In this document: positions 4,942 through 50,870 of the stretch, one piece after another
Numbering within the stretch: the first letter of the stretch is position 1
How the letters are laid out: each line of letters starts with the position of its first letter
Virus record (IMG/VR): IMGVR_UViG_3300021963_000021
Location: 248,001-312,000 of that record
Reading direction: 5' to 3' (one strand)
Length of the DNA: 64,000 nucleotides
Program-made: the position numbers and the translations under genes
The notes under the pieces: generated by a model
Told to the model about the DNA's origin: nothing
The model's database searches: none
What the model saw: the letters and a program-made list of their open reading frames with translations, nothing else

Positions 4942-4970
4942 GAAATATTTATGTGCTACTATAACCCGTG

Positions 4971-4976: not shown

Positions 4977-4980
4977 CTTC

Positions 4981-12774: not shown

Positions 12775-12953
12775 CGAGGCGCCCTTTCAAGCTCATCAAA
12801 AAAATCTATGCCAAACTCTTTTTCTACTTGTTCTTTTAATTGAGGGTTCTGTTGTATGTTATAGAGTTTACGCCATAGCACAATATTTTGCTGCTGTATC
12901 TCCATAAATTTTTTTACATAAAACGGTTCTGTTAAAACTGGTTCTTCAGTCAT
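12771..12953 (-). CDS. Hypothetical protein
   Basis: 60-aa ORF with ATGA-type overlaps on both sides. Confidence 0.6.
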   Translation of the reverse strand: MTEEPVLTEPFYVKKFMEIQQQNIVLWRKLYNIQQNPQLKEQVEKEFGIDFFDELERAPR

Positions 12954-28060: not shown

Positions 28061-28711
28061 ATGAAAGGCAAAATCGCACTATTCATTCATCACCCTAAGT
28101 GTTCAATTGAATGTGGTAACGGAATTCTAGAAGCCCTTCAACCGTATTATAAATTTAAAATATTCACACGCTGGCATCTTGATGCCAATTTTTTTGACGA
28201 TGTCGATATGATAGCAGTGCCCGGAGGCATCGGAGATTCAGATAGCCACGAAGCACTCTTTAGAGAAAACGGAGAACGTGTACGTAACTTTGTAAAAGGT
28301 GGTGGCAAGTATCTAGGAATATGTATGGGAGCATACTGGGCGGATCAGTATTATTTTGATCTGTTCAAAGACATACGTGCTAGCCAATACATCACTCGCC
28401 CTGGCACAGATACAAAAAGACCCCATGCCAAGGCGCAGCGAGTGTTATGGAAAGGTCAAGAAGAACTCATGTACTTCTACGATGGCTGTGCTTTCCATGG
28501 AGAAGGTTTAGATACAGCAGATATCTATAGCCTTTATCCAAACGGAGATCCTATGGCAATAATACAGGATAATGTAGGTGCTATAGGATGTCATCCAGAA
28601 AGTGAAATCAGTTGGTATACAGAATATCACAGTTGGATGAAGCCCTATTATCACGGTGGGCGACACCATGAATTATTGCTAGACTTTGTTAACGATTTAT
28701 CCAAGCGATAA
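28061..28711 (+). CDS. Class I glutamine amidotransferase-like (BPL_N-type) protein
   Basis: VPGG, YLGICMGAY nucleophile elbow, HPE; start reassigned to ATG 28061. Confidence 0.8.
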   Translation: MKGKIALFIHHPKCSIECGNGILEALQPYYKFKIFTRWHLDANFFDDVDMIAVPGGIGDSDSHEALFRENGERVRNFVKGGGKYLGICMGAYWADQYYFDLFKDIRASQYITRPGTDTKRPHAKAQRVLWKGQEELMYFYDGCAFHGEGLDTADIYSLYPNGDPMAIIQDNVGAIGCHPESEISWYTEYHSWMKPYYHGGRHHELLLDFVNDLSKR

Positions 28712-28718
28712 ATATTTC

Positions 28719-29432
28719 ATGGATAAAATTATAGCAACGTTAGTGATGACGCACATCACGATAATCGCAGTTACCTTATATCTACATAGAAGTCAGGCAC
28801 ACAGAAGTGTAGAGTTTCACCCTGCGGTTAATCACTTTTTTAGATTCTGGTTATGGCTAACAACAGGCATGACTACTAAGGCTTGGGTAGCAGTACACCG
28901 CAAACATCATCAAAGCACAGATGTAGAAGGTGATCCACATAGCCCACATATCTTTGGTATATGGCGACTATTAACAGGCGGCTGGAGTCTGTACCACGAA
29001 GCTACCAAAGATCCTAGATTCGTTTTAAAATACGGAGTAGGAACTCCTAAAGATAAGATAGAAACATTCTACACTAGATATCATCGCCACGGCATTCTCT
29101 TAATGTTAGTCATAGACTTGTTATTATTTGGGCCGTGGGGTTTTCTAGTGTGGGGTGTACAGATGATATGGATACCATTTTGGGCTGCTGGCTTTATCAA
29201 CGGTATAGGACATTGGTGGGGATATCGCAATGGACACACTGATGACCACAGTCGCAATGTAAGTCCTTGGGGCATATTGATTGGTGGGGAAGAATTACAC
29301 AACAACCATCATTTAAATCCAGCAAGTCCTAAACTAAGTCGTCGATGGTTTGAATTTGATGCTGGTTGGTTTTGGATTAAGGTTTTAAGTTTTGTAGGGC
29401 TTGCAAAGGTTAGAAATCTTAACACCGTTTAA
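28719..29432 (+). CDS. Acyl-CoA (delta-9-type) fatty acid desaturase
   Basis: His boxes HRSQAH, HRKHH, HNNHH; TAAATA at 28709-28714. Confidence 0.93.
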   Translation: MDKIIATLVMTHITIIAVTLYLHRSQAHRSVEFHPAVNHFFRFWLWLTTGMTTKAWVAVHRKHHQSTDVEGDPHSPHIFGIWRLLTGGWSLYHEATKDPRFVLKYGVGTPKDKIETFYTRYHRHGILLMLVIDLLLFGPWGFLVWGVQMIWIPFWAAGFINGIGHWWGYRNGHTDDHSRNVSPWGILIGGEELHNNHHLNPASPKLSRRWFEFDAGWFWIKVLSFVGLAKVRNLNTV

Positions 29433-29561
29433 ACTAAAAGTCTTTAGGTAAGTTTCCATGTCGCTGTTATATGCGATCATCTTGGCTGGTGCCATAAATT
29501 TAAATTGTAGCATCAGCCAAACCGAATAATCAATCCACCAATCTATTGGAGTGTACATCAT
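29385..29561 (-). CDS. Small hypothetical protein
   Basis: MMYTPIDWW start overlaps the cyclase stop (ATGA). Confidence 0.45.
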   Translation of the reverse strand: MMYTPIDWWIDYSVWLMLQFKFMAPAKMIAYNSDMETYLKTFSLNGVKISNLCKPYKT

Positions 29562-31609
29562 TTTTCGTGAGCGATAAATTCGCCCTGCCAGTTTGGACCT
29601 AGATCTTGTTGCTTCATAAACTCGCAACGTTCGATCCAGATCTTGTAATACTTGTCCATTTGTCCACCGAATGTACCTTTTAACTTAGAACACATGTCGG
29701 CTGCTTCGTCGAACTTCTTAGCTTTATATAACGCTTGCATTTCGTTGTACTTTGCTAAATCTTTACTCCAGTCTGCTCCGTTAGGACGTAGTGCTGTATA
29801 GATTAAGTCTGCCACTGACTTGCCCTTAGGTTGTAAGTTATCAATCATCAAATAGAAGAAATCATCTTTAGTTCTGTTGTAAGTTTCGGCACCGATAATA
29901 CATAGCACACCATAAGCCTTACAACGTGCTTCTAGTCGAGCGGCTGTTGAAACCATGTCACCTAGAATGTCATAGCTATGTCTGTCAGTTGATCCCATCT
30001 CACCAATAAAGCCAATACCTGTATTACAGCCCCAACCCATTGCGGCTGGTGGTAAGCCTTGTGCTTCCATTTCTTTTGTATAAGCATCAACAGCGTCTAA
30101 CATCTGTAAGCCAACAGCAACAATAGTTCTAGCATGATTAGGATCTTCGATAGGAGCACCATGTATGTGCATTGACGCATCGCCTACATACTTGATAACC
30201 ATACCTTTGTTGTCCATAATAGGACGACTGATAGCATCCATGTAGCCGTTCATATACTTGCCTAGTCCAGCAACGTCATCACCGTAGTGTTCACCAATTG
30301 GAGTAAAGCCACGTAGGTCACTGAACATGACTGATACGTCTTTACGCACACCACGTTTGATTAGGTCTGGATCTTTTTGTAGCATCTCTACTACTTCTTT
30401 AGAGCAATAACCAGCAAACTGTTTCTTGATAGCTTGCTTCTGTAAGAACTCGCTTACAAACTTAACGCCATAACAATGAAGAGCAACGAGCCCAAGGCCA
30501 ATCGAGATCGCAGTCGCGTCTCCCAAGACAAGCCAATTACTGAAAGCGTACATAGTACCAGGAATAACGGCACCAATAATAACCACAGTAGCACCAATGC
30601 CAACATAAGTCCACCTCGATAAGAAAATTAATAATAAACCAAATGCTGCCAATGCTAGTATTTCAACACCGTCGGCATAATCCGGACGCTGTATAACCAC
30701 TCCATTAATCATAGTTGTAATAACCGCAGCCTGTAGTTGATGCGGAAATACTGCGCCCACTGCTGTTGGTACTGGATTGCTGATACCTGCGGCAGTAGGA
30801 CCTACTACAACAACGGCACCTTCAAAGTCTTTAGGCAAATTAGTTAAATTGTACGACTTGTTGGTTTGACTCCAATCAATCCATACACGGCCTAGATTGT
30901 CTGTGGTAACAGGACCAAATTTAGGCACACGCATTTTCTCAACGCCGCCTTCGAATAGTTTTACTTGGAACGTAGTGTCACCTGCGGCTACACGTAGGGT
31001 TTCCATAGCTAGGCTAGGATATAATTTTTCATCAACAGCAACGATCAGCGGCATACGACGATTAACACCATCTACTTCTGGTAGTGTGTTTACAATTCCA
31101 ACACCAGCTGCGGCACTTTCTAATTGTGGTACGTTAGCAATAAGTCCCGGATATGCGACGATTTGATCTAACCATTCTGGACCTAATACAGCACTACCCG
31201 GAACACGGGGTGTATTTTTTGTTTTATCGCTGGGGATACTAGGAAGTATTACTGGATAATTTTTAAGAGCGGCTCCAAGATCCCTATCTCCACCAGTGCG
31301 ATCGCGATCAGCCATGAGCACATTGAGAACAACAAGGCCAGCGTTACGATGATACAGGTCTTCAATAATTTCAGCATAGTTAACCCTCGGTAGTGGCCAT
31401 TGACCATATTTGTCTAATGCTGCTTCGTCTATGTTTACTGTAACAATATTATTTGGAGCAGCAACTTCTTTTGGTTGTGTGATTAGTGTATCGAAGTAAC
31501 GTAGTCTTACGCTTTCGACAAATGTGGGGTCTGCTACACGTATGCCCACTACTAAGGCTAGCGTTAGTAGAGCAGTCCAAGGGCTTAAAAGGATTTTTTT
31601 TAGCATCAC
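29558..31609 (-). CDS. CHASE2-domain class III adenylate/guanylate cyclase
   Basis: CHASE2 (IDEAAL..YGQWPLPR), 3 TM helices, FSDLRGFT, KYVGDA, GDMVSTAARLE. Confidence 0.95.
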   Translation of the reverse strand: MMLKKILLSPWTALLTLALVVGIRVADPTFVESVRLRYFDTLITQPKEVAAPNNIVTVNIDEAALDKYGQWPLPRVNYAEIIEDLYHRNAGLVVLNVLMADRDRTGGDRDLGAALKNYPVILPSIPSDKTKNTPRVPGSAVLGPEWLDQIVAYPGLIANVPQLESAAAGVGIVNTLPEVDGVNRRMPLIVAVDEKLYPSLAMETLRVAAGDTTFQVKLFEGGVEKMRVPKFGPVTTDNLGRVWIDWSQTNKSYNLTNLPKDFEGAVVVVGPTAAGISNPVPTAVGAVFPHQLQAAVITTMINGVVIQRPDYADGVEILALAAFGLLLIFLSRWTYVGIGATVVIIGAVIPGTMYAFSNWLVLGDATAISIGLGLVALHCYGVKFVSEFLQKQAIKKQFAGYCSKEVVEMLQKDPDLIKRGVRKDVSVMFSDLRGFTPIGEHYGDDVAGLGKYMNGYMDAISRPIMDNKGMVIKYVGDASMHIHGAPIEDPNHARTIVAVGLQMLDAVDAYTKEMEAQGLPPAAMGWGCNTGIGFIGEMGSTDRHSYDILGDMVSTAARLEARCKAYGVLCIIGAETYNRTKDDFFYLMIDNLQPKGKSVADLIYTALRPNGADWSKDLAKYNEMQALYKAKKFDEAADMCSKLKGTFGGQMDKYYKIWIERCEFMKQQDLGPNWQGEFIAHEK

Positions 31610-31631
31610 ATATTTATTGATAAATTACTGT

Positions 31632-32438
31632 ATGATTCTAAGAATAGTTGGTGACAGTTTTGCGTCCACAGAAATGGGCGGCTACGGCAAAGATCGTACT
31701 TGGTTCTCGCAGCTAGGCGAAATGCTAGGTGCGGAAGTTATGAATAACAGCATGATTGGTGCTCCGCAGGATTTCTCCTGGTATAGTCTACATGACTGGG
31801 CACCGTTCGTTTCGCCAGATGATTATCTTGTTATTATACTAACACACCCTGCGAGATTTTGGTTTGTGGAAGATGATCCTACTATGGGCAAGGCAGATCA
31901 TCTTAGAGAGTTTGCTTTTAAGTACGGACAGGGAGTAGCCGATGCCGCAGGACTTTATGTTACCTATCTACAAAGACCTAAACTAGATACAGTATTCCTA
32001 GAAAATCGCTTAGGTTGGTTGGCCTATAATGCTCACTATCGAGGTTGGCGCAGACCTTTAGTGATCAAAGCATTCCCACAGACTATGCCTATGGCCGAAG
32101 AATACCCTATATTAAATCTATCCAAAGGTGACCTTACAGAAGTATCGAGTAGGGAAATCATTGGTAGAGATTTTAATAAATGGTGTAAAGGCTACGACAT
32201 TAGATTCAATCACTTGTGTATGAGGAATCATACAGTATTAACAGACAAAATCTATCACAGTCTAACCACAGACACGCAGTTAGATCTAACCACCGGTTTC
32301 CATGAAGATTTTTTAGATGAGACTGTTTTTAAAAATGAAAAATTCTTAGAAGCAGAATGTTCATTAGAAGCGGTTGATCGTAGAAAGAGGGAGATGAAAG
32401 CCACCTCCCTCGGTCTGTTTAACTTCCTAAAAAATTAA
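31632..32438 (+). CDS. SGNH/GDSL-like hypothetical protein
   Basis: N-terminal IVGDSF and late NH; start reassigned to ATG 31632. Confidence 0.5.
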   Translation: MILRIVGDSFASTEMGGYGKDRTWFSQLGEMLGAEVMNNSMIGAPQDFSWYSLHDWAPFVSPDDYLVIILTHPARFWFVEDDPTMGKADHLREFAFKYGQGVADAAGLYVTYLQRPKLDTVFLENRLGWLAYNAHYRGWRRPLVIKAFPQTMPMAEEYPILNLSKGDLTEVSSREIIGRDFNKWCKGYDIRFNHLCMRNHTVLTDKIYHSLTTDTQLDLTTGFHEDFLDETVFKNEKFLEAECSLEAVDRRKREMKATSLGLFNFLKN

Positions 32439-34486
32439 AATCTAATAATACCGCGTAGGCTTATAGTATTATTATTGATATTGTTGCCTTGCTGTGTTGC
32501 CGCTGTTAAAGCAATAGAACCTTTCTTTGTTGGAGCATAAGCAATAGTAGCAGCACCTGTTGTTACAGAGTCTGTTGTTGTGCCAATATCACCAATTAAG
32601 CGGAAATCGTTAATTGCTTTTTCGTAACGTACACCGGCTTCACCGTATGTGTAGTTGTCTGTAGTTTTAGCTACAGTTCTAGCACTTTGGATGTCACCAG
32701 CTTCTGTGTAACCACCTATTGTCGAACGACCAACAGTAACACCAGCGTAAGGACGGAATCCTTTTGTATCTGGAGCATACACTCTGTTGTTCAACCACAC
32801 ATTGTCACCCTTAGCAGAATGACTGTTGTTAAACACATTTTCTACAGTACGATTGCCTTTGATGTTATTGTCAGCATAACCTAAGTTGTTGACAATAGTT
32901 GCGCCATTTTCTAAGTTGTAAACTGAAAACAATCCAACGTGATTTTTGTCTTGTGCTGTTTTAGAATCTGTGCCATCCATTGTTGTGTTAACACGATTGT
33001 ATTGAGCACCTAGTCTCCAGTTCGGCTTGATTTCTTTTTCAACGCCTAGACCATATATTTGACTATTCGCGTTGTAGCCGTTGTTAATGTTTGCCTTAGC
33101 GCCACTGGCATTTACATACATTGTTATTTTCTTTTCTTCGTCAGTATAACCATCTGTACGGAAAGCATCCATGTTCAATCCACGATCTAACTGTTTGTTT
33201 AGATTGTTCAAGTATGCCATTTGATCAACACGACCACTGAAACTATCGTTAGCAACACTAGTATTAACACTGTTAGACAATGTTGTGTTAGATGTTGTAG
33301 CACTATCAGAGGTTGTTGTAGTACCATCACTCCATGTAGTTGTTGTTCTTACTTTAGTTACTACAGTACGCTCCATTGGAGTAGTTACATTTGTTGTTGT
33401 TTCGCGAGCAATAGTCTGCTTGCCACCAGCTTCGCTGGCATCGTGATGCGCTAGGCTAGCTGTGATCACAGGCAATGTTGTGCTGACTGCTGTTGTATCG
33501 CTGACTGTAATAATTGCTGTTGATGTTCCTGTTACTGTTGGGGTAGCAGGTGTTGTTGGTGCTGACGCTGCTGATGTAGCACTACCAACGTCAACTAATG
33601 TACCGCCACCAGGAGCCGCACCAGGAGTACCGCCACCAGCACCACCGTCAATAGCATAGGTAGCTGCTGCAAAAGCACTTGGTCCAAATATGTAAGCATA
33701 GTTCCAAGTAAGTATGTCGCCTACTGATACGTTAGCAGCATAAAAACCAATACCAATAGTGTCATCAGCTCGTTTAACATCAACTGTGCCGCCACTGTAG
33801 TAATTTTTAGGATCGCTGGTCCAACCTTGTATAGCAGTATTGACGTTGCCGGATTGCGATGAATATAATCCTAAAGCATAGCGGCTCACAGTTGCTTCTG
33901 AGAACACTACGTTAGTCTTAGGAATAACACCGTAACCACGAACGTTGTCAGTTGCTGAACTATCGCCAGGTGCTGCTACAGCATCTGGATCAATGTAACG
34001 ACCAAAATATAAATGTGGCATTGCTGTTTTAGCATCTAGTCGTGTAGTAATGTCTAGATATTTCTGTGCTGAAGGTAAACTGTATGTATGACGTATATCA
34101 AATTCTGTAGCACTACCAGCCCATACTGCTGAGCTTGCTGTAGGTGTTCCTACCCAAGCACCTGATACAGCAGTATTGCCATCCATTTGAAATCCGGCAT
34201 TATTATTACCGTACAGTTTGAGTTTTGTTCCTGTTGAATCATCAATTCGCACAGCCCAACCCTCATAAGGTGAACCTGGCGTTAGATAATCGTAGCTAGG
34301 GTTAAATGTTCCAGTTCCTGTATTGTCATACTGTAGTCCTGGTTTAGTGTTTCCACCACTTCCAAGTGTACCTGTCGTTTCGTTTACACCTGCTTTGATG
34401 TATTCATTCTGTAGTATTGAATTGCCGGCCAAAGCAGACGTTGATATAATTGTGGCCAAGAGACCACTTATAATAGTTTTTTTCAT
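32435..34486 (-). CDS. Autotransporter-like outer-membrane beta-barrel protein
   Basis: Signal peptide, Thr-rich linker, C-terminal amphipathic strands ending in Phe. Confidence 0.7.
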   Translation of the reverse strand: MKKTIISGLLATIISTSALAGNSILQNEYIKAGVNETTGTLGSGGNTKPGLQYDNTGTGTFNPSYDYLTPGSPYEGWAVRIDDSTGTKLKLYGNNNAGFQMDGNTAVSGAWVGTPTASSAVWAGSATEFDIRHTYSLPSAQKYLDITTRLDAKTAMPHLYFGRYIDPDAVAAPGDSSATDNVRGYGVIPKTNVVFSEATVSRYALGLYSSQSGNVNTAIQGWTSDPKNYYSGGTVDVKRADDTIGIGFYAANVSVGDILTWNYAYIFGPSAFAAATYAIDGGAGGGTPGAAPGGGTLVDVGSATSAASAPTTPATPTVTGTSTAIITVSDTTAVSTTLPVITASLAHHDASEAGGKQTIARETTTNVTTPMERTVVTKVRTTTTWSDGTTTTSDSATTSNTTLSNSVNTSVANDSFSGRVDQMAYLNNLNKQLDRGLNMDAFRTDGYTDEEKKITMYVNASGAKANINNGYNANSQIYGLGVEKEIKPNWRLGAQYNRVNTTMDGTDSKTAQDKNHVGLFSVYNLENGATIVNNLGYADNNIKGNRTVENVFNNSHSAKGDNVWLNNRVYAPDTKGFRPYAGVTVGRSTIGGYTEAGDIQSARTVAKTTDNYTYGEAGVRYEKAINDFRLIGDIGTTTDSVTTGAATIAYAPTKKGSIALTAATQQGNNINNNTISLRGIIRF

Positions 34487-34545
34487 ACCGATTTCGCTCC
34501 CGGTTAGTATAGTTATTTAAAGGGAAGGCAGAAAAAATTAAACTA

Positions 34546-35643
34546 TCACTTTTGAGTTATGCTGATGGTACTGGTAGCACCTTTATTAACCTGTTGAACA
34601 ACCTGTTGGCCGTCTTGGTTAATACTCAAGGTAGTATTTTGAGTAGTGGGTAGTGTAACTGTGGCATTATGATTTGTTACACGATATAATGTTATCTTAC
34701 TTTGGTCTTCGTTAAAGTAATAGAGTAAACCACTGGAGGCATTGTAGTTAGGTAGCAAGGCAACATCTATTTCATTGCTTAATAGTGTTTTGTTTTGTGC
34801 GTCAAGTTCATTCCAACTATAAAATGCCAATAGGTCAGCATTAAGGTCATTTCTATCTAATGCTCTGTTGTCGTCAAGTTTATTTTCATCTAGTTTGGTG
34901 AACTTTAATAGATCAACATCTAGTTTATCAAAATCTAATAGACCTCTTTCTTTCAATGCTTTTCTATGTTCGTTACCGTCGTCTTGTATTTCTGGTGGCT
35001 TGCTGATAATCAGCATATTGTTTATGTTAGCTTGATCTAGTTTTACTACCACAGGCTGGCTAGGAGTCTGATAAGCAGACACAACCATAGTTGCCTGATA
35101 GGGTACATCTAATATCACGACTCCGCCTTCGTTGCGTACTTCAATGGCACCTGTCACACAGCCTTTGCTGTCGCAGCTAGGTAACAGCACTATTAGACTG
35201 CGACCCATTTCGTCTACGGTCATAGAGAAGTCTGTACCACGAACACCTACACTGGCTGTGGGAGTGTTGATTGCTACCTGTTGTGGATTGTTTTTAGCTA
35301 TCTGTCCACTGGCATACCGAGCTGTGCCTAGTGTTAATTTCATAGCCAGTTTACCTGATCCTTTGTTAGGATCGTAGACGAAATCATCTATGACTATCTT
35401 ACTGTGTTCGTTTATTTTCACAGTGGTTTTATCGTCAAAGGTCAGCTGTGCTGTAGCCTTGGCAGTTGAAATTGCGTCATTCATTTCAACTGCCGTGTTT
35501 AGGCTAGATGCTATAGATTTTTTAGACCTTAATATTTCCGTTGGGCCAGTTTGTTCAGTTACTTTACCTACACCCGCCCAGAGATTAGTCTGACTGAGTG
35601 ACAGAAATATTAACGCCAGCGCCTGAGCTAGTGATATTCGCAT
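34546..35643 (-). CDS. FecR-domain protein
   Basis: Signal peptide; LTFDDKTTVKINEHS; TPTASVGVRGTDF; C-terminal curlin-like INQ/ITQ strands. Confidence 0.88.
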   Translation of the reverse strand: MRISLAQALALIFLSLSQTNLWAGVGKVTEQTGPTEILRSKKSIASSLNTAVEMNDAISTAKATAQLTFDDKTTVKINEHSKIVIDDFVYDPNKGSGKLAMKLTLGTARYASGQIAKNNPQQVAINTPTASVGVRGTDFSMTVDEMGRSLIVLLPSCDSKGCVTGAIEVRNEGGVVILDVPYQATMVVSAYQTPSQPVVVKLDQANINNMLIISKPPEIQDDGNEHRKALKERGLLDFDKLDVDLLKFTKLDENKLDDNRALDRNDLNADLLAFYSWNELDAQNKTLLSNEIDVALLPNYNASSGLLYYFNEDQSKITLYRVTNHNATVTLPTTQNTTLSINQDGQQVVQQVNKGATSTISITQK

Positions 35644-36247
35644 TCTTCGCAGTCGCTCCCGATTGTGTTAGGACTATTTGATTAGGTGATGAAACAGTCG
35701 ATGTGCTAGTAATAGCAATTTCACCTCTGTGAGCTCCTGCTCCTGTTTGTGTATGCGAAACGGTGTTGTAGTTTCCAACGATATCTATTTTGCTGAAATA
35801 GGCACCAGACCCTGTTAGAGTCTGTGTTACCGCGTTATTATCACCTAATATGTCTTGTCTAATTACGGACGCATTACATGAAGCATTTAGAGCAGTACCG
35901 CACTCTACAGTTGACACGTTGTCACTGCCTAACTGATTGATAGTTAGGGCTGTACCTGTGCCTACACCGCCTAGATTAGGATTGTTCAATGATAGTGATA
36001 TCAAGTTACCGACACCAACTTGTTGTATATTAACGGTATTGCCACCACCACCGATATATGCGTTGTCGCCTGTGTTTAACCCTTCTATCTTATTACTGGC
36101 ACCATCCTGAAGGATAGTCACAGCCGTATCGTCACCGACTTGCTCGATATAAAGGTCATTGGCTAACGATACTCCTGAGAATAGTAATGTTGCCATCAAG
36201 GCAATTGTGCTAGGTTTGCCTATTATACCCGTCATTCTTTTTTTCAT
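35585..36247 (-). CDS. Curlin-repeat (CsgA/CsgB-like) protein
   Basis: Signal peptide and repeated I-x-Q-x-G-x-x-N units. Confidence 0.8.
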   Translation of the reverse strand: MKKRMTGIIGKPSTIALMATLLFSGVSLANDLYIEQVGDDTAVTILQDGASNKIEGLNTGDNAYIGGGGNTVNIQQVGVGNLISLSLNNPNLGGVGTGTALTINQLGSDNVSTVECGTALNASCNASVIRQDILGDNNAVTQTLTGSGAYFSKIDIVGNYNTVSHTQTGAGAHRGEIAITSTSTVSSPNQIVLTQSGATAKNANITSSGAGVNISVTQSD

Positions 36248-36278
36248 TTCGCTCCACCTTGATCATCTGCTGATCTTG

Positions 36279-37406
36279 TTATTTTTTCACTTCTAGTTGT
36301 ATGCTTTCTCTCTTAACATATCCTTTCTTGCCGTCCTCGGCAATGATCTTAATCCACTCCCCTTGCTCTTCTTCTACTTGTATTGCTGTGTTCTTTGTAA
36401 ACAACCAAACTCGGGTCGAGGTTTCGTTAGGTTCTCTCCTAACATAATGCGTGTCCTTCATTACTGCTTTTTTACCTACTAGTGTGTCTGTGTTCTTTTT
36501 TTCTGCGGCAGGAGTCTCTCCCTGCTTATCTAACGTTGGGAATCGAACCCAATCATCTTTTTTATCTTCTGTCTTCAAAGGAAATTCCTGGCTTGCGGAA
36601 CTTTCGGAAACTGCGGGGTGTTGACGCATAGGAGTTTTAAAACGCCAAATTCCTTTTTTCTCACCTTCGATAATCATATCAAATACTGCCTGTTCAATTG
36701 CTACACGAACAGCATAAGTTGTTGGTTCATTTAACGCAGCACCATTTTCCAATTCAACTGCTTTAGTACCTGCGTCCACAAATCGTAGTACACCTACGTT
36801 ATGCTGTGTACTGTAAATTGTTTTGCTCACTGAAGTAGTCAATAGCACTTCGCCTGAGCTTACGCTTATTAGACGTATAGAAACTACTATCTCATCAACG
36901 CGGTATTGTTGGCTTCCACCTATGCCTAGGAATCTTGCTCCACTACCGCCCGAGCGGATGTTGCTGTCAAATCCTATAATGCCTCCCTCGATCATAGCAC
37001 CTGCTACGGTCATTGGCTTTAAAGGTTTGGCATCCTTGCCTTCATAAACTTCACGTTGATTGCGTATCAGCTGACGTTCTTTGATAAGATTATCTAAGCC
37101 CACACGCTCTACTACACGGAACCAACTAGGAGTATCCTGTAGACTTTTAATTAAAAATACTTCAGCACCCTGTGTTACTGCTTTACTAAAAACAGCTAAC
37201 CTATCGTTGGGTTTCATTTGTCCTGTTTTATCAGTGAACCCGTATACCGCAATGGTCATTGGCGGTCCTTCTAGGGGAGGTATCCTGTTGTATAGATTTT
37301 CTTTTGGCTTAACAGCTATCGGTTCTTCTTTGACCAATTCCATTTGTACACTGGCACACCCAGATAACAAAGTAGCTATCAGCGATAATAAAATTAATTT
37401 TTTCAT
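36279..37406 (-). CDS. csgG: CsgG curli secretion channel with C-terminal SH3-like domain
   Basis: Lipobox LLSGC; AVYGFTDKTGQ; FRVVERVGLDNLIKERQLIR; C-terminal VRREP...GEWIKI...GYV. Confidence 0.9.
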   Translation of the reverse strand: MKKLILLSLIATLLSGCASVQMELVKEEPIAVKPKENLYNRIPPLEGPPMTIAVYGFTDKTGQMKPNDRLAVFSKAVTQGAEVFLIKSLQDTPSWFRVVERVGLDNLIKERQLIRNQREVYEGKDAKPLKPMTVAGAMIEGGIIGFDSNIRSGGSGARFLGIGGSQQYRVDEIVVSIRLISVSSGEVLLTTSVSKTIYSTQHNVGVLRFVDAGTKAVELENGAALNEPTTYAVRVAIEQAVFDMIIEGEKKGIWRFKTPMRQHPAVSESSASQEFPLKTEDKKDDWVRFPTLDKQGETPAAEKKNTDTLVGKKAVMKDTHYVRREPNETSTRVWLFTKNTAIQVEEEQGEWIKIIAEDGKKGYVKRESIQLEVKK

Positions 37407-37852
37407 TAGAACGCAAAGCTCGCTATAGGTACAGTAATTTCTGTACGACTACCATTTGACTCAATGATAGTTAAAGTAACTTCAGTTCCGGTTTTAACCC
37501 AGCTGATGTTTGTTCCCTGGAAATTCATAGTTCCGTTGCTTGCTCCGCCCTCAGCAAATAACTGATCAGCTAACTGTTTAGATAACTGCGCATATATCCT
37601 TGCTTCAACGTTGACCAAGAACTTAGATAAGTTGCTGTTCTTTTTGGCCAATTCAGCTGCGTCAGCAGCGGCTTTGGCGTCATCTTTGATTTTTTGTCTG
37701 CGCTGGGATTCTAGCTGCTCGATAGCCAATACGTGAGAAGAGTACCCGTTACCTGGTATAAACGATGGGCTTTGGAAAGTATGTACTAGTTCAGCAGCAC
37801 TGGCATTAGATAAGCATACTACCGCTAGTAAGATACCGATTTTCTTATACAT
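37406..37852 (-). CDS. csgF: CsgF-like curli assembly protein
   Basis: Signal peptide then ELVHTFQSPSF; RIYAQLS..L..QLF; adjacent to csgG. Confidence 0.8.
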   Translation of the reverse strand: MYKKIGILLAVVCLSNASAAELVHTFQSPSFIPGNGYSSHVLAIEQLESQRRQKIKDDAKAAADAAELAKKNSNLSKFLVNVEARIYAQLSKQLADQLFAEGGASNGTMNFQGTNISWVKTGTEVTLTIIESNGSRTEITVPIASFAF

Positions 37853-37932
37853 TTAGACGCTCCCGGCAATACTATAATTGTATTTAAACCGAAAGCGTCA
37901 AAAGTTAAGTATTGAGTTTAACCTAGATTAAA

Positions 37933-39009
37933 TTAAGGTGTATAGACCTGTACACCCTGTTGTTGGCTTGAATAAAAGCCATATGATATGTCTACTTTTT
38001 CAGCAAACAATTCCGGACTGTCAACATATGTTACTGTCATCTTTTGTGAATTAAACAAGAACATGCCAGCAAATTTAGATTCAGCTTGATAATAGCTATA
38101 AACGAATTGTTTTAGATAGGCTTTGAAATTGGCCCAATTAACTACTCCATTACCGTCGATCGTACTGTGGAATCCTGCCAGTTGGTCTCTAGATATGCTA
38201 GGATACAAACTGGTAATAATATGTGTCATAGCATCTACTATAAGATTGCGAACTTCGGCATGGTTTACACCCATCTGTACGATCTGAGGACCCATTGAGT
38301 ACAAATTAGACTTGGGACCTAACACTACTTTGATTGTTTTAGGATCTAGATCTAACTTGCGTTCTTTGATAAAAACAGCAACTTCTGTCTGAGCTGCTTT
38401 AATTCCGGGCTCTACCTTACCGTAGGCAGCACTGCTACCGTACATTCTTCCTTCGTTGTCCTTGACTTCAAACCCCTTGCCAGCAATAGTAATATCGCCA
38501 GCACCGCCAATAAGAATTTCAGGACTTAGTAATGCTAGGAAAAATTCTCCCTTGCCGCGATTAAGTGTCTTTTCTTTTACTTGAAATTTTCCAGCTATAG
38601 ACATCAGCGTAGGAGCAATGTCTTGATAAAGTGTTGGATAGTTTGTAACAACAAGAGTTTCGATAGACTGTGTTTTACCCGGAGACATCAACAGTCCAAC
38701 ATCAATAATTCCAGTTTCTGATAGCTCTTTGGCAAAACCAATCTTCTCATCGACAGAAGCTGGTGAATTTACAATAGCGTGTGACAGTGTACTCTGTACG
38801 CTGCGCAGATCTGGGTCTCGTTGGAATATAGCATCAAAGCCTTTACCGATATCAATTTTGCTTACATAGCTGAAAATTTGATTCAGTTCTTTGATGTCAA
38901 ATATTCTGGAAATTTTAGACTGTATCTTTGCCTGTACAACTGAAGGATTTGCTCCCTGTGTAGTAGCAGCGTTAGACAGTTTTTCAAATAGGAATTCAAA
39001 TGCTCTCAT
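37933..39009 (-). CDS. Late protein with PD-(D/E)xK-like motif; possible internal head protein
   Basis: TAAATA at 39015-39020; starts MRAFEFLFE; GKGE...GD...EVK. Confidence 0.5.
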   Translation of the reverse strand: MRAFEFLFEKLSNAATTQGANPSVVQAKIQSKISRIFDIKELNQIFSYVSKIDIGKGFDAIFQRDPDLRSVQSTLSHAIVNSPASVDEKIGFAKELSETGIIDVGLLMSPGKTQSIETLVVTNYPTLYQDIAPTLMSIAGKFQVKEKTLNRGKGEFFLALLSPEILIGGAGDITIAGKGFEVKDNEGRMYGSSAAYGKVEPGIKAAQTEVAVFIKERKLDLDPKTIKVVLGPKSNLYSMGPQIVQMGVNHAEVRNLIVDAMTHIITSLYPSISRDQLAGFHSTIDGNGVVNWANFKAYLKQFVYSYYQAESKFAGMFLFNSQKMTVTYVDSPELFAEKVDISYGFYSSQQQGVQVYTP

Positions 39010-39017
39010 GCGTATAT

Positions 39018-39698
39018 TTACCTGATTTCTGGAAACAGACAATCCTGTATAAACACACTTACATCGTCTTCGCTGAGCCCTAGACTAACCATTACACGCG
39101 GTGTGTGCGGGTTTTGCTTTTGATTTTGAGCGTAGAAGTTTTGCTCAAATGTAGTGTCTGCTACTTTGTTGTTAGTTTCGCCTACAGTTTCTAGATAATG
39201 ATTTATCAGTATATGTGCTAGGCTACTGATCTGTGCTAGTTCGTGTTCGTCACTGACATTGCCAGCAGCTATCATACTGGTACTGAATATGCGCTGCGCC
39301 CAGTCTGGAAGCTCTCTTTTTTTGATCCATTCATATCTGCTGACTTCTTCAGCAAAATATTCTATCATAGGATGTGTACGATCTGCGGTAGGGCTGTAGT
39401 CAATAAAACAGCCCGTGATCTTATTTTTTCCTGCGATCACATCGAACCCAAAAATAGGTGCCGGGTTATGGGTATGCGGGAATATACAACAGTGCATCAT
39501 CCAGAGGCCCTTTGTGGATCGGGCGTCAACTACATCGACGTGAGCTCTTCGATAATTTTCACTAGTCCAAACACGGTTAACCCATCCCGGCTGATTGAAT
39601 CGCGACATCCCGGGCTCGTGTACTTCAACACCCGTTTTGCCAAATTGATCTTCCAACAGGTGTTGGATATCAATTAGAGTTGACCAAACTTGACTCAT
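39018..39698 (-). CDS. pcyX: Ferredoxin-dependent bilin reductase, PcyX type
   Basis: Counted residues D55, M67, H69, C71, D86 plus C-terminal NPH match phage PcyX as recalled; adjacent heme oxygenase. Confidence 0.85.
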   Translation of the reverse strand: MSQVWSTLIDIQHLLEDQFGKTGVEVHEPGMSRFNQPGWVNRVWTSENYRRAHVDVVDARSTKGLWMMHCCIFPHTHNPAPIFGFDVIAGKNKITGCFIDYSPTADRTHPMIEYFAEEVSRYEWIKKRELPDWAQRIFSTSMIAAGNVSDEHELAQISSLAHILINHYLETVGETNNKVADTTFEQNFYAQNQKQNPHTPRVMVSLGLSEDDVSVFIQDCLFPEIR

Positions 39699-40227
39699 TC
39701 AATTCCTTCATGATAGCAATAGCATGATCAAATGCTACATTGGCTTCTTCACCTAGACTGTCGTCGATCTTAGTTCTAATCTTAGCGACTAGTTCGTCTT
39801 TGTTACGGAATTGATAAAACTTACCGGAACCAGGAACCCGTTTGGCAATCATCTGCCCGCCATATAGGTCGCCCATGTGACGAACATAAAGGTGTGCCAT
39901 TAATAAATGACAACGGTCTGGATCTGTACCGAGTTCGTTGAGATATTTGATGTAGGCAGTTGTGGCAGGAACTAGAGTTAATTGGTTTTGTGGAATTTCT
40001 AGTTCTTCGAGATCTTCGTAGATCGCCATTACTCTAGGAAGGCCGGATAGTTCTGTGAACAATCCGTTTGTTGCTGCCTGATATTCTAAGGCACTATAGA
40101 CTTCCAACATCTGTAACAGATATTGAGCATAGTGTTCTTTACTGATACTGCCGCTCAATAAAAGTTTAGCAAATGCTGTTCGCTCCGCATCGTGATGTTT
40201 CTCTGCGGTTAATTCTTTAAGACTCAT
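39670..40227 (-). CDS. hemO: Heme oxygenase
   Basis: LKELTAEKHHDAE (proximal His), AHLYVRHMGDLYGGQMI. Confidence 0.95.
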   Translation of the reverse strand: MSLKELTAEKHHDAERTAFAKLLLSGSISKEHYAQYLLQMLEVYSALEYQAATNGLFTELSGLPRVMAIYEDLEELEIPQNQLTLVPATTAYIKYLNELGTDPDRCHLLMAHLYVRHMGDLYGGQMIAKRVPGSGKFYQFRNKDELVAKIRTKIDDSLGEEANVAFDHAIAIMKELNESSLVNSN

Positions 40228-46372: not shown

Positions 46373-46381
46373 GGCAAGTAT

Positions 46382-46828
46382 TTAGTAAGTTTTAACCCAC
46401 TCCCATTGGTTTTGATAGTTGTCATGACAGGCCAACCCTGTGAACGTTTCTTCTATGTTAAACGCAAACACCTTCGACATCAGCACTCGACAGGTCTTGT
46501 CGCTAGACACTACCCTGGTTTCTAACGGTACTGAGTATCCAGACGCATCGCCCTTGACCCATTCTACACGTTGTCCATTTTGAGCCTGTCCTAGAGCAAC
46601 GATCTGGGAATCGAAGTACAACTTAGTCTGTTCCTCGGTTAGAGTTTTAAACCAGCCAAGACTTAACCTTTTAACAGATTGATATCTGCGCTTCTCTTGG
46701 TACTCAGTGGCATCAAATGCCACAGCAACATTAACGATACATGTCGCCAGTAAACAGCCTAATATTGCCTTTGTTATCAATTTCACAAGCGACTCCTTTG
46801 AATCGTACTTCACCAATTTGATGGCCAA
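46382..46828 (-). CDS. Surface-antigen-like (RT0821/Lpp0805-type) protein
   Basis: ALGQAQNGQRVEW...CR...GLAC...W. Confidence 0.55.
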   Translation of the reverse strand: MAIKLVKYDSKESLVKLITKAILGCLLATCIVNVAVAFDATEYQEKRRYQSVKRLSLGWFKTLTEEQTKLYFDSQIVALGQAQNGQRVEWVKGDASGYSVPLETRVVSSDKTCRVLMSKVFAFNIEETFTGLACHDNYQNQWEWVKTY

Positions 46829-50489: not shown

Positions 50490-50511
50490 TTCTTTCTCCT
50501 TTTGGCAAATG

Positions 50512-50537
50512 GAACAGGCTACCGAAGTAGCCTGTTC
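50512..50537 (-). other. 11-bp C(UUCG)G hairpin downstream of tmRNA
   Basis: GAACAGGCTAC-TTCG-GTAGCCTGTTC; no U-tract. Confidence 0.75.
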
Positions 50538-50539
50538 TG

Positions 50540-50830
50540 GAAGTTTCTGTTGCTAGGTATTCCTACCCCAGGCAGGGTTTAAGCTGCCAATGCGTAAACG
50601 TTGTCGTTTGCGTTTAGTTTGTTTGCTTGATTTAGGGTCATCGCCTACCCTGCTGTCCACTTTGATACTCAATACCCTGTCGAACCTAATTCAGGCCCAT
50701 CAAAAGCACTTCTCGATTTACATTCCCCCGAATACATCATTTCTGGTTCGGCTAATACGCAAATGCTTTTGGTGGACCTGGCCGGTACTGCCCCGGCGTC
50801 CAGAACACCTTTTTCATTGCTTCACACAGC
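50540..50830 (-). ncRNA. ssrA: Circularly permuted (two-piece) tmRNA; outer ends approximate
   Basis: T-arm GCCGG-GGCAGTA-CCGGC then CAGGTCC-A-CCA ending 50770; 5' end GGGCCTG at 50698 gives G3:U70; tag ANDNVYALAA* at 50611-50579. Confidence 0.92.
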
Positions 50831-50870
50831 AATAATACTATTTAACAGTCTTTGTTGACAGTTGTCAACC

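What the first reader, a model, noticed from the sequence alone, without database searches (positions are those of the whole stretch)
29558..37852. Curli-like secretion cluster linked to a FecR protein and CHASE2 adenylate cyclase
Seen: a contiguous minus-strand set csgF, csgG(+SH3), curlin, FecR, autotransporter-like barrel, then a CHASE2 cyclase, with TAAATA late promoters at 37881, 34514 and 31611. The FecR protein ends in curlin-like strands (SINQDG...ISITQK). Established: CsgG/CsgF export curli amyloid; FecR and CHASE2 are periplasmic signalling domains; csgF/G homologues have been reported in some marine T4-like phages. Inference: a trans-envelope module in which surface curlin assembly signals through FecR to a cAMP output, for example host aggregation, superinfection exclusion or lysis timing. 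The SH3 (peptidoglycan-binding-like) fusion on CsgG is unusual.
Basis: partly seen in the sequence, partly recalled or inferred. Interest (0 to 1): 0.65.

Follow-up and report, generated by a model that had tools for sequence, protein, structure and literature searches.

The report
Phage curli secretion cluster with FecR–CHASE2 cyclase
A 364-kb T4-like freshwater phage carries the curli-secretion, FecR and adenylate-cyclase gene cassette already described in marine SAR11 and OM43 phages, in a variant form, and comparison with bacteria suggests that the FecR protein is the periplasmic partner of the cyclase's CHASE2 sensor rather than an iron regulator.

Summary
The genes are real: csgF, a csgG lipoprotein with a C-terminal SH3 domain, one curlin, a secreted FecR-domain protein, an autotransporter and a CHASE2 class III cyclase. 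The set is not contiguous: a plus-strand phage ORF (31635-32438) splits it. The cassette is already published for pelagiphages and phage Melnitz (PMC7029224, PMC9004378, PMC9599517, which names FecR and the cyclase). About 25 distinct related viral contigs keep csgF-csgG-curlin-fecR in order. All 16 distinct loci with enough room downstream except one have the cyclase 0-5 kb further on. The slot between fecR and the cyclase varies, so the autotransporter is not a core part.

Points not found in the papers searched:
- The cyclase sensor is CHASE2.
- In 151 alphaproteobacterial genomes, at least 38 of 163 CHASE2 genes have a FecR gene within 7 kb (about 2 expected), and none lies near csgG.
- The CsgG-SH3 fusion marks this freshwater lineage.
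- TAAATA is a genuine signal, found at two distinct spacings from start codons.

Best reading: FecR couples the type VIII secretion (T8SS) and outer-membrane part to cAMP synthesis. This is a variant of a known kind, of moderate interest.

The parts
37406..37852 (-). csgF: secreted T8SS accessory protein, 148 aa, with a signal peptide. The mature N-terminus keeps an F-Q-x-P-x-F type segment like the CsgG-binding end of E. coli CsgF.
   Evidence: Pfam CsgF E 4.7e-18; phrog_35372 E 1e-47; 49-50% identical to the HTVC008M and Melnitz CsgF; hydrophobic N-terminus
36279..37406 (-). csgG-SH3: outer-membrane channel lipoprotein with a lipobox (L-S-G-C at residues 14-17). The CsgG domain spans residues 1-259. 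A linker of about 60 residues follows, then a bacterial SH3 domain at residues 319-369 (DNA 36300-36452).
   Evidence: Pfam CsgG E 3.3e-52, SH3_3 E 1e-8; E. coli CsgG structures E 9e-48 over residues 3-259; long form in about 18 of 28 aligned relatives, SH3_3 significant in 11
35585..36247 (-). Curlin-repeat protein, 220 aa, with a signal peptide, Q-x-G-x-x-N type repeats and two invariant Cys. It is the only curlin gene in the 364-kb genome.
   Evidence: Profile against PDB 8C50 E 1.5e-7; Pfam Curlin_rpt below cut-off; alignment A6; single match in the own genome
34546..35643 (-). Secreted FecR-domain protein, 365 aa. It has a signal peptide and an N-terminal FecR beta domain (residues 24-187) with an invariant Cys pair. 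A conserved Leu/Asp-rich linker (residues 203-295) leads to a small C-terminal beta domain (residues 305-364) bearing a curlin-like motif. The gene overlaps the curlin gene by 59 nt.
   Evidence: Pfam FecR E 2e-12; phrog_37870 E 9e-90; AlphaFold model and Foldseek match to the PupR and BDI_1681 anti-sigma periplasmic domains, E 1.5e-5 to 1e-4; alignments
32435..34486 (-). Autotransporter, 683 aa: signal peptide, passenger of about 300 residues of unknown fold, Thr/Ser/Ala/Pro-rich linker, and a C-terminal beta-barrel ending in Phe. It occupies the variable slot and is not a conserved member of the cassette.
   Evidence: Pfam Autotransporter E 6.7e-13; no likeness to the Melnitz or HTVC008M slot genes; slot survey; passenger fold failed, pLDDT 49
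31635..32438 (+). Opposite-strand ORF, 267 aa, with G-D-S-F near the N-terminus and no signal peptide. It belongs to a family of viral hypothetical proteins, has homologues in the same slot of L005, and interrupts the cluster.
   Evidence: no Pfam or PHROG match
29558..31606 (-). CHASE2 class III adenylate cyclase. One transmembrane segment precedes a periplasmic CHASE2 domain (about residues 27-312). Three more transmembrane segments, the cytoplasmic cyclase domain (about 423-581) and a conserved C-terminal extension of about 100 residues follow. The start is revised to the ATG at 31606.
   Evidence: Pfam; phrog_35576 E 6e-186; 46% identical to the Melnitz cyclase over the full length; catalytic residues; hydrophobic segments
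37874..37907 (-). Promoter-like motif upstream of csgF. A TTAACT-like element sits about 16 nt before TAAATA (37881-37886), followed by a GGGAGCG ribosome-binding site. TAAATA lies 28 nt before the ATG.
   Evidence: the same layout occurs upstream of csgF in 10 or more relatives
34487..34545 (-). Second copy of the same motif (TAAATA 34514-34519, 27 nt before the ATG) upstream of the slot gene. It suggests a separate transcription unit.
31607..31616 (-). TAAATA 4 nt before the cyclase ATG, with no Shine-Dalgarno sequence. It is conserved 3-5 nt before the start in relatives, often just after a terminator hairpin. A leaderless transcript is possible.

Best explanation
This is the freshwater jumbo-phage version of the phage T8SS-FecR-cyclase cassette known from pelagiphages and Melnitz.

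Shown:
- One transcription unit encodes an outer-membrane channel (CsgG lipoprotein, here with a periplasmic SH3 domain), its cap CsgF, one curlin subunit and a secreted FecR-domain protein.
- A variable slot follows, here holding an autotransporter and an opposite-strand ORF. After it comes an inner-membrane adenylate cyclase whose periplasmic sensor is a CHASE2 domain.

Inferred:
- The cassette joins two bacterial modules that are separate in bacteria. One is a minimal curli system. The other is a FecR/CHASE2 sensor pair of the kind found next to each other in Alphaproteobacteria, Burkholderiales and Acidobacteria, with cyclase, kinase or HD outputs.
- In the phage, fecR has moved into the T8SS operon.
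- The FecR domain stays in the periplasm and modulates the CHASE2 domain.
- The C-terminal half of the FecR protein (conserved linker plus curlin-like beta domain) engages the CsgG/CsgF/curlin machinery. The state of the outer-membrane apparatus or fibre would thereby set cAMP synthesis in the infected cell.
- The phage encodes no cyclic-nucleotide-binding protein, so cAMP would act on host CRP-type receptors.

What the cell then does (aggregation, exclusion of other phages, timing of lysis) is not known.
For: - Domain identities.
- Same gene order in Melnitz and HTVC008M.
- In the related viral loci csgF-csgG-curlin-fecR is invariant. All 16 distinct loci with at least 6 kb of room downstream except one (L028) have the cyclase 0-5.2 kb further on.
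- fecR overlaps the curlin gene by 59 nt and shares its promoter motif, while the slot gene and the cyclase have motifs of their own.
- FecR-CHASE2 pairing in bacteria without T8SS:
  - The two bacterial FecR relatives found by similarity (Acidobacteria) are each followed directly by a CHASE2-HD protein.
  - In 151 alphaproteobacterial genomes there are 163 CHASE2 and 236 FecR matches. At least 38 pairs lie within 7 kb against 2.0 expected.
  - 39 of 40 of the best CHASE2 proteins are cyclases.
  - Published operons: LysM-FecR plus CHASE2 kinase (PMC5192318); cyaD1 region with smc02177 (PMC5498481).
- No CsgG lies near CHASE2 in bacteria: 0 of 40 loci, and none of the CsgG matches outside the phage-like contigs of G003 lies within 100 kb of a listed CHASE2 match.
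- FecR is not a Fec-type anti-sigma. It has a cleavable signal peptide instead of an anti-sigma domain, and the phage has no ECF sigma or TonB receptor.
- Across 13 loci, FecR distances track CsgG (r 0.96) and the CHASE2 half of the cyclase (r 0.64), but not its catalytic half (r 0.15).
- A precedent for outer-membrane barrel to CHASE2 cyclase to cAMP to CRP-type regulator is the S. meliloti system NsrA, CyaD1/D2/K and Clr (PMC13001267, PMC7529298).
- Contigs of three freshwater metatranscriptome libraries cover csgF, csgG, curlin, fecR and the slot genes at 89-99% identity.
Against:
- Gene neighbourhood is not binding.
- In bacteria fecR sits beside the CHASE2 gene. In the phage it sits beside the curlin gene, with a variable slot and separate promoters before the cyclase. 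The cyclase is inverted in four loci. All this fits loosely coupled or independent modules equally well.
- The distance correlations could follow from physical linkage alone.
- The cyclase has Ser where class III cyclases have the ribose-orienting Asn (G-D-M-V-S in place of G-D-x-V-N), so its activity is uncertain.
- The curlin likeness of the FecR C-terminus is weak.
- CsgE and a second curlin are lacking, so fibre formation itself is unproven.
- RNA-library contigs do not prove transcription.
Confidence: 0.45

Rival explanations
1. Two independent modules sit side by side in a hypervariable island. The T8SS makes fibres or a pore on its own. The FecR/CHASE2 cyclase is a self-contained sensor, taken as a pair from a bacterium, that manipulates host cAMP in response to some periplasmic or external cue unrelated to the T8SS.
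For: - The FecR-CHASE2 pair exists widely without T8SS in bacteria.
- There is a variable slot with separate promoter motifs, and the cyclase is inverted in some loci.
- One locus (L028) has T8SS and fecR but no cyclase within 8 kb.
- PMC9599517 reports that the cyclase is not always present.
Against: - fecR is always the fourth gene of the T8SS unit, overlapping the curlin gene, and never sits next to the cyclase unless the slot is empty.
- The linkage has survived in myoviruses, podoviruses (PMC9599517) and this jumbo lineage despite heavy turnover around it.
- FecR carries a conserved curlin-like C-terminal domain.
Confidence: 0.27
2. This is the pore reading (Buchholz et al., PMC9004378). 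CsgG/CsgF is used as a gated outer-membrane pore for lysis timing or uptake, not for fibres. The cyclase and FecR time or gate it.
For: - There is no CsgE, and only one curlin gene in this genome.
- The constriction residues differ from E. coli: Tyr51 and Asn55 are replaced and Phe56 is kept.
- The SH3 domain could fix the pore to the cell wall.
Against: - A curlin-repeat gene is kept in every relative, directly after csgG.
- CsgF, which is needed for fibre anchoring and not for pore assembly, is always kept.
- An outer-membrane pore alone does not depolarise the inner membrane.
Confidence: 0.12
3. FecR is an iron-responsive regulator that ties T8SS expression to iron supply. This is the reading offered in PMC9599517.
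For: The Pfam family name, and the role of FecR in ferric-citrate signalling in E. coli.
Against: - The protein has a cleavable signal peptide and no cytoplasmic anti-sigma domain or membrane anchor.
- The phage has no ECF sigma or TonB-dependent transducer.
- Its bacterial relatives pair with CHASE2 sensors, not with Fec genes.
- The strongest FecR matches in Alphaproteobacteria (anti-sigma type, 320-500 aa) are not the ones next to CHASE2.
Confidence: 0.04
4. The cyclase is catalytically weak or dead, and the CHASE2 protein works as a scaffold or decoy.
For: Asn is replaced by Ser at the ribose-orienting position in the window and in most relatives.
Against: - Both metal-binding Asp residues (D431, D477), the substrate Lys473 and Asp547, and Arg558 are invariant across 16 sequences.
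- A subset of relatives carries a swapped-in catalytic domain with the canonical Asn, which argues that output matters.
Confidence: 0.1

Closest known systems
Pelagiphage and Melnitz T8SS (curli) cluster with FecR and adenylate cyclase (Zaragoza-Solas 2020 PMC7029224; Buchholz 2022 PMC9004378; Wittmers 2022 PMC9599517; HTVC008M gp014-019, Melnitz gp99-104)
   Same: Same order csgF-csgG-curlin-fecR-(slot)-cyclase. Proteins are 25-50% identical: CsgF 49-50%, CsgG 48%, FecR 40-44%, cyclase 35-46%, curlin 25-28%. No CsgE. The phages are T4-like.
   Different: The genome is 364 kb, from freshwater and estuary samples, against 141-147 kb marine genomes. CsgG carries an SH3 domain. The second curlin-repeat gene is replaced by an autotransporter plus an opposite-strand ORF. 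No histidine kinase was recognised upstream. There is only one curlin gene.
E. coli curli system (CsgA, B, C, D, E, F, G; type VIII secretion)
   Same: CsgG lipoprotein channel (E 9e-48 to solved structures), CsgF, and a curlin-repeat subunit.
   Different: CsgE, CsgC, CsgD and a separate nucleator are lacking. The constriction residues are changed. SH3, FecR and a cyclase are added. The curlin has two invariant Cys residues.
Sinorhizobium meliloti NsrA - CyaD1/CyaD2/CyaK (CHASE2 cyclases) - Clr cascade, with the FecR-domain gene smc02177 (PMC5498481, PMC7529298, PMC13001267)
   Same: CHASE2 class III cyclase in the inner membrane. An outer-membrane beta-barrel protein is needed for perception. 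A FecR-domain periplasmic protein is part of the system. cAMP is read by a CRP-type regulator. Removal of CHASE2 makes CyaD1 constitutive.
   Different: It is a bacterial system without T8SS. Its signal is an extracellular protein (ribosomal uL2). smc02177 is described there as a Clr target, and a direct role in sensing was not shown.
Burkholderia 'BiofilmReg' operon and P. aeruginosa PA4035/PA4036-type pairs (response regulator, LysM-FecR protein, CHASE2 histidine kinase, DUF4136; PMC5192318)
   Same: A secreted FecR-domain protein is encoded next to a CHASE2 sensor. A peptidoglycan-binding domain is part of the system (LysM there, OmpA in locus L051, SH3 on CsgG here). It is linked to biofilm formation.
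   Different: The output is a histidine kinase rather than a cyclase, and the peptidoglycan-binding domain is fused to FecR itself. There is no T8SS.
FecA-FecR-FecI cell-surface signalling (anti-sigma factors such as PupR)
   Same: The fold of the periplasmic FecR domain (Foldseek 6OVK E 1.5e-5, 4M0H E 9e-5). The logic of relaying an outer-membrane event inward.
   Different: There is no anti-sigma domain, membrane anchor or STN-binding subdomain. The phage has no ECF sigma or TonB transducer.

Membership tests
Type VIII secretion (curli) system | CsgG outer-membrane lipoprotein channel | tested here: met
   Pfam E 3.3e-52; lipobox L-S-G-C; E. coli CsgG structures E 9e-48 over residues 3-259
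Type VIII secretion (curli) system | CsgF accessory protein | tested here: met
   Pfam CsgF 66 bits against a cut-off of 25.8. There is no direct match to solved CsgF by single-sequence search.
Type VIII secretion (curli) system | Secreted subunit made of curlin repeats | tested here: met
   Single-sequence Pfam is below the cut-off (12.4 against 20.7 bits). A profile of 17 homologues matches curlin-repeat protein 8C50 at E 1.5e-7. The Q-x-G-x-x-N repeats are invariant.
Type VIII secretion (curli) system | CsgE periplasmic adaptor, and a separate nucleator (CsgB) beside the major subunit | tested here: not met
   No CsgE match in the 364-kb genome and only one curlin-family gene. Alphaproteobacterial curli systems also lack CsgE (PMC9599517).
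Type VIII secretion (curli) system | Formation of extracellular amyloid fibres | not testable with these tools
   Needs Congo-red binding or electron microscopy of expressing cells.
Phage T8SS-FecR-cyclase cassette (PMC9599517) | Order csgF-csgG-curlin-fecR with a cyclase downstream, in a phage genome | tested here: met
   phage identity
Phage T8SS-FecR-cyclase cassette (PMC9599517) | Second curlin-repeat gene between fecR and the cyclase; histidine kinase upstream (reported for podoviruses) | tested here: not met
   The slot holds an autotransporter and a plus-strand ORF with no likeness to the Melnitz or HTVC008M slot genes. The upstream 369-aa ORF has no Pfam match even at E 10.
FecR/CHASE2 two-gene sensor module | Secreted FecR-domain protein together with a membrane protein whose periplasmic CHASE2 domain is flanked by membrane segments | tested here: met
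   The bacterial pairing is quantified.
FecR/CHASE2 two-gene sensor module | Physical and functional coupling of the FecR and CHASE2 domains | not testable with these tools
No solved CHASE2 structure was found by sequence.
Class III adenylate cyclase | Two metal-binding Asp, substrate-specifying Lys plus Asp or Thr, and transition-state Arg | tested here: met
   D431, D477, K473, D547 and R558. D431, D477, K473 and R558 are invariant in 16 sequences; position 547 is Asp or, in five relatives, Thr. Aligned to CyaB 3R5G and Cya2 2W01.
Class III adenylate cyclase | Ribose-orienting Asn in the G-D-x-V-N motif | tested here: not met
   Ser at this position in the window and in 10 of 15 relatives. 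Five relatives have Asn together with Thr in place of D547.
Fec-type anti-sigma factor (iron signalling) | N-terminal cytoplasmic anti-sigma domain with membrane anchor, and a cognate ECF sigma and TonB-dependent transducer | tested here: not met
   A cleavable signal peptide is present instead. No Sigma70_r2 or TonB receptor match in the genome.
Type Va autotransporter (slot gene) | Signal peptide, passenger, and C-terminal beta-barrel ending in an aromatic residue | tested here: met
   Pfam Autotransporter E 6.7e-13 at residues 464-638, and a terminal Phe. The passenger function is unknown.

The most novel reading that the evidence does not exclude
The FecR protein is a trans-outer-membrane tether.
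- Its folded FecR domain is retained in the periplasm against the CHASE2 sensor.
- Its conserved linker passes through the CsgG/CsgF channel.
- Its curlin-like C-terminal domain seeds or caps the single-curlin fibre outside.

Occupancy of, or pull on, the fibre (contact with neighbouring cells, debris of lysed cells, or a superinfecting phage) would then be converted directly into cAMP in the infected cell. This would be a phage-built surface sensor, analogous to RTX adhesins held in their pore by a retention module.

Observations that do not exclude this reading, and hint at it:
- Four of ten alphaproteobacterial FecR neighbours of CHASE2 cyclases are N-terminal FecR domains fused to cadherin, Big_9 or RTX adhesin repeats.
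- The C-terminal domain has a weak fold match to an RTX-adhesin surface-anchoring domain (5IX9).
Probability: 0.1. Interest if true: 0.8.

Novelty: new variant of a known kind. Interest (0 to 1): 0.42.

Why it matters
Phage curli genes are abundant in the ocean, at about 0.1% of assembled viral proteins according to PMC9599517, and the papers describe their function as unclear or mysterious. This window extends the cassette to a freshwater jumbo T4-like lineage with thousands of metagenomic relatives. The comparison gives a concrete, testable wiring. FecR would be the periplasmic partner of a CHASE2 cyclase rather than an iron regulator. The cassette would be a phage-made fusion of a minimal T8SS with a bacterial FecR/CHASE2 sensor pair. 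The ligand and the partners of CHASE2 domains are a long-standing unknown in bacterial signalling. The quantified FecR-CHASE2 neighbourhood, and the compact five-gene phage version of it, offer a tractable system in which to study that question.

Tried and rejected
No binding evidence exists either way.
- Fold of the autotransporter passenger: pLDDT 49 from a six-sequence alignment, too poor to search. The Atlas feature search gave only unnamed clusters.
- Near-identity DNA search in the phage collection: no match.
- Canonical T4 late promoter TATAAATA: only 2 in the window, none in the cluster, fewer than chance.
- Sigma-70 and terminator scans of the region: not above shuffles for promoters. 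One TTGACG-16-AATTAT candidate overlaps the csgF motif.
- Genome-collection scan with the FecR profile: only 8 loci. Five are phage-like contigs binned into MAGs of unrelated taxa, so they say nothing about bacterial hosts.
- Word-based protein search with FecR: more than 5,600 hits. The 120 listed are all at least 69% identical and most are unnamed, so it shows abundance but does not reach bacteria.
- Likeness of the FecR C-terminus to curlin: weak (hhalign probability 34%). I do not call it a curlin repeat.
- The Foldseek match of the FecR C-terminal domain to 5IX9 (E 0.019) is a lead only.
- The match of the curlin profile to T4 Hoc (E 0.003) is taken as compositional.
- A cyclic-nucleotide receptor, ECF sigma, TonB receptor, CsgE, a second curlin and a second cyclase were sought in the phage genome and not found.
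- The large representative protein search was not used, because family scans had already settled the identities.

Full report
**What is there**

The window lies at 248,001-312,000 of a 363,943-bp IMG/VR virus record that CheckV rates complete. The record encodes a T4-type major capsid protein (Gp23, E 9.5e-82), ribonucleotide reductase and many radical-SAM proteins. It is therefore a jumbo T4-like phage.

On the minus strand the region holds six genes:
- csgF (37406-37852).
- csgG (36279-37406). It has a lipobox, a CsgG domain that aligns to E. coli CsgG structures over residues 3-259 (E 9e-48), a linker of about 60 residues and a bacterial SH3 domain (residues 319-369).
- A 220-aa secreted curlin-repeat protein (35585-36247).
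- A 365-aa secreted FecR-domain protein (34546-35643).
- A 683-aa autotransporter (32435-34486).
- A CHASE2 class III cyclase (29558-31606).

The curlin fails the Pfam threshold as a single sequence. A profile of 17 phage homologues matches the solved curlin-repeat protein 8C50 at E 1.5e-7.

The set is not contiguous. A plus-strand ORF (31635-32438) lies between the autotransporter and the cyclase. It belongs to a family of viral hypothetical proteins and has two homologues in the same place in locus L005.

**It is a known cassette**

Protein searches of the phage collection found CsgG and the cyclase together only in Methylophilales phage Melnitz and Pelagibacter phage HTVC008M. Their records show the same order, csgF-csgG-curlin-FecR-(second curlin-repeat protein)-cyclase.

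Identity to the window proteins is 49-50% for CsgF, 48% for CsgG, 25-28% for curlin, 40-44% for FecR and 35-46% for the cyclase. The window's autotransporter and plus-strand ORF have no counterpart there.

Three papers describe the cluster:
- PMC7029224 reported the 'curli operon' of pelagimyophages and proposed 'sibling capture'.
- PMC9004378 proposed a gated pore that times lysis.
- PMC9599517 explicitly added FecR and an adenylate cyclase to the module, in myo- and podoviruses. It showed global abundance and expression, inferred an alphaproteobacterial origin, and stated that FecR and the cyclase are not in bacterial T8SS operons.

PMC7029224 and PMC9004378 contain neither 'cyclase' nor 'FecR', and PMC9599517, the one checked for the term, does not mention CHASE2. 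No held paper links CHASE2 with phage curli or reports a phage CsgG-SH3 fusion.

**Conservation**

A scan of IMG/VR with CsgG returned 41 loci.
- In every locus that extends far enough, csgF-csgG-curlin-fecR is kept in that order.
- fecR overlaps the curlin gene by about 59 nt.
- All 16 distinct loci with at least about 6 kb downstream of fecR except one (L028) have the cyclase 0-5.2 kb further on. In four loci it is inverted.

The slot between fecR and the cyclase is variable.
- In the window's lineage it begins with a large secreted protein of 664-1445 aa that ends in Phe. Of 13 such proteins, 4 match the autotransporter beta-domain and 5 carry F5/8 type C lectin-like domains.
- In marine relatives it holds a second curlin-repeat protein.
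- In three loci it is empty.

The autotransporter is therefore an exchangeable cargo, not a core part.

The long CsgG form (354-415 aa) occurs in about 18 of 28 aligned relatives, with a Pfam-significant SH3 domain in 11. The short form (256-299 aa) occurs in the marine relatives and some others.

The FecR family is very abundant in metagenomes, with more than 5,600 hits. The stretch or close relatives occur in freshwater, riverine, estuary and 'marine'-labelled metagenomes. Contigs of three freshwater metatranscriptome libraries cover csgF, csgG, curlin, fecR, the 3' end of the autotransporter gene and the plus-strand ORF at 89-99% identity. This shows presence in RNA libraries, not proof of transcription.

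**What FecR is**

The protein has a signal peptide and four further parts:
- An all-beta N-terminal domain (residues 24-187) with an invariant Cys pair.
- A linker (residues 203-295) that AlphaFold cannot place but that has nine invariant Leu or Asp positions.
- A small six-strand C-terminal domain (residues 305-364), with block-mean pLDDT of 72-86.

The N-terminal domain matches the periplasmic domains of the anti-sigma factors PupR and BDI_1681 (Foldseek E 1.5e-5 to 1e-4). There is no anti-sigma domain or membrane anchor. The phage encodes no ECF sigma and no TonB-dependent receptor. The 'iron regulator' reading is therefore unlikely.

Its profile likeness to curlin is weak (probability 34%).

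**FecR pairs with CHASE2 in bacteria, without T8SS**

A profile scan of one genome per prokaryote species found only two truly bacterial relatives of the phage FecR. Both are Acidobacteria with GC 0.64-0.65. In both, the FecR gene (in one of them fused to OmpA) is followed directly by a CHASE2 protein with an HD output domain, and no csgG lies nearby.

I then searched 151 alphaproteobacterial genomes.
- CHASE2 gave 163 matches in 67 genomes. FecR gave 236 matches in 71 genomes. 63 genomes have both.
- From the listed rows I read 30 CHASE2-FecR pairs within 7 kb, and 8 more came from fetched loci. Random placement predicts 2.0. The lists are truncated, so 38 is a lower bound.
- The strongest FecR matches (anti-sigma type) are not the paired ones. 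The paired ones are short secreted proteins or large proteins.
- Of 40 top CHASE2 proteins, 39 carry a class III cyclase domain, and none has a CsgG gene within 6 kb.
- CsgG-family matches occur in 31 of the 151 genomes. None lies within 100 kb of a listed CHASE2 match, except on phage-like contigs of one MAG.

Published cases agree. One is the Burkholderia and Pseudomonas operons encoding a LysM-FecR protein and a CHASE2 kinase (PMC5192318). Another is the S. meliloti CHASE2 cyclase CyaD1, discussed together with the FecR-domain gene smc02177 (PMC5498481).

In S. meliloti the CHASE2 cyclases raise cAMP on sensing an extracellular protein through the outer-membrane barrel NsrA, and cAMP acts through the CRP-type regulator Clr (PMC13001267, PMC7529298).

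The phage cassette is thus best seen as a phage-made fusion of a minimal T8SS with a FecR/CHASE2 sensor pair, in which fecR has been moved into the T8SS operon.

**Further hints of coupling**

Across 13 loci, pairwise distances of the FecR domain track those of CsgG (r 0.96) and curlin (r 0.82). They track the CHASE2 half of the cyclase moderately (r 0.64) and its catalytic half hardly at all (r 0.15). CHASE2 against its own catalytic domain gives r 0.16. The catalytic domain has been exchanged between lineages while the periplasmic half stays more with the T8SS-FecR block. Physical linkage could explain this gradient too.

A peptidoglycan-binding domain recurs in these systems: LysM or OmpA fused to FecR in bacteria, and SH3 on CsgG here.

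Four of ten alphaproteobacterial FecR neighbours of CHASE2 cyclases are N-terminal FecR domains fused to cadherin, Big_9 or RTX adhesin repeats. This suggests that FecR domains can be the periplasmic end of surface-exposed proteins.

**The cyclase**

- Topology: one membrane segment, periplasmic CHASE2 (about residues 27-312), three membrane segments, then the cytoplasmic catalytic domain.
- Both metal-binding Asp residues, the substrate Lys-Asp pair (ATP type) and the Arg are present. D431, D477, K473 and R558 are invariant in 16 sequences; position 547 is Asp or, in five relatives, Thr. The ribose-orienting Asn is Ser in the window and most relatives. Five relatives carry a Lys-Thr domain with Asn. 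Activity is likely but unproven.
- The genome has no other cyclase and no cyclic-nucleotide-binding protein. Any cAMP would act on host receptors.

**Promoter motifs**

TAAATA is the rarest of its 15 letter permutations in the window (31 against 48-102). 15 of the 31 copies precede an ATG-initiated ORF within 45 nt, against 6-15% for the permutations. The spacing is bimodal: 4-6 nt in 6 cases and 21-38 nt in 9 cases.

The copies before csgF (28 nt) and before the slot gene (27 nt) lie in a motif shared with relatives. That motif has a TTAATT-like element about 16-20 nt upstream and a GGGAGCG ribosome site downstream.

The copy before the cyclase lies 4 nt from the ATG, with no ribosome site. 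The same arrangement recurs in relatives, often just after a terminator hairpin. It may mark a leaderless transcript.

The octamer TATAAATA is absent there.

**Verdict**

Three things are new here:
- The freshwater jumbo-phage variant, with the CsgG-SH3 fusion, a single curlin, and an autotransporter in the slot.
- The recognition of CHASE2.
- The quantified FecR-CHASE2 pairing, which recasts FecR as the sensor's partner.

The decisive binding and cAMP tests remain to be done.

Noticed in passing
whole window; examples 4946-4951(-), 4971-4976(+), 28709-28714(+), 39015-39020(-), 46379-46384(-): TAAATA is depleted overall but enriched before gene starts, in two spacing classes. The 4-6 nt class has no room for a ribosome-binding site, which suggests leaderless mRNAs in this phage lineage.
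   Followed up: partly
window 50510-50888 (-): A tmRNA gene. ARAGORN calls it permuted, with tag peptide ANDNVYALAA. Rfam matches both permuted tmRNA (137 bits) and the full-length Betaproteobacteria tmRNA model (120 bits). Melnitz also has a phage tmRNA. The beta-type match may hint at a betaproteobacterial host.
   Followed up: partly
window 39018-39698 (-) and 39670-40227 (-): A ferredoxin-dependent bilin reductase and a heme oxygenase lie just upstream of the cluster. These are pigment-pathway auxiliary genes in a phage whose host is unknown.
   Followed up: no
window 28686-29432 (+); L035:13225-13944: A fatty-acid desaturase gene lies next to the cyclase. An ORF with a near-identical N-terminus lies in the fecR-cyclase slot of L035, so this gene seems to travel with the cassette.
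   Followed up: no
alignment A4 (window 29558-31609 and 15 relatives): The cyclase catalytic domain comes in about four sequence types, with either Lys-Asp plus Ser or Lys-Thr plus Asn. These types are distributed independently of the CHASE2 type, which indicates domain-level recombination.
   Followed up: partly
L005:15548-15871, L014:15257-15930, L018:15206-15529, L027:14025-14366, L028:16456-16755: Small secreted proteins of about 100-113 aa recur just upstream of the cyclase in relatives. They are absent from the window.
   Followed up: no
L045-L049 (MAG contigs); genome G003: The phage cassette sits on short contigs binned into MAGs labelled Flavobacteriaceae, Rhodobacteraceae, Pelagibacter, Legionellales and Pirellulales. 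One MAG has five CsgG copies. This is probably phage DNA mis-binned, so these labels should not be read as hosts or as bacterial T8SS.
   Followed up: partly
L059:72-2891, L064:1651-5745, L074:7179-13022, L081:7471-10302: Alphaproteobacterial proteins with an N-terminal FecR domain followed by cadherin, Big_9 or RTX repeats are encoded next to CHASE2 adenylate cyclases. No held paper matched the CHASE2 + FecR search with such a pairing.
   Followed up: partly
window 11-16000: A dense run of radical-SAM proteins, with at least five ORFs matching radical-SAM PHROGs.
   Followed up: no
window 37933-39042 (-): A 369-aa ORF lies upstream of csgF and has no Pfam or PHROG match. It is conserved next to csgF in several relatives: L004, L010 and L013/L014. 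It occupies the position where podovirus cassettes are reported to have a histidine kinase.
   Followed up: no
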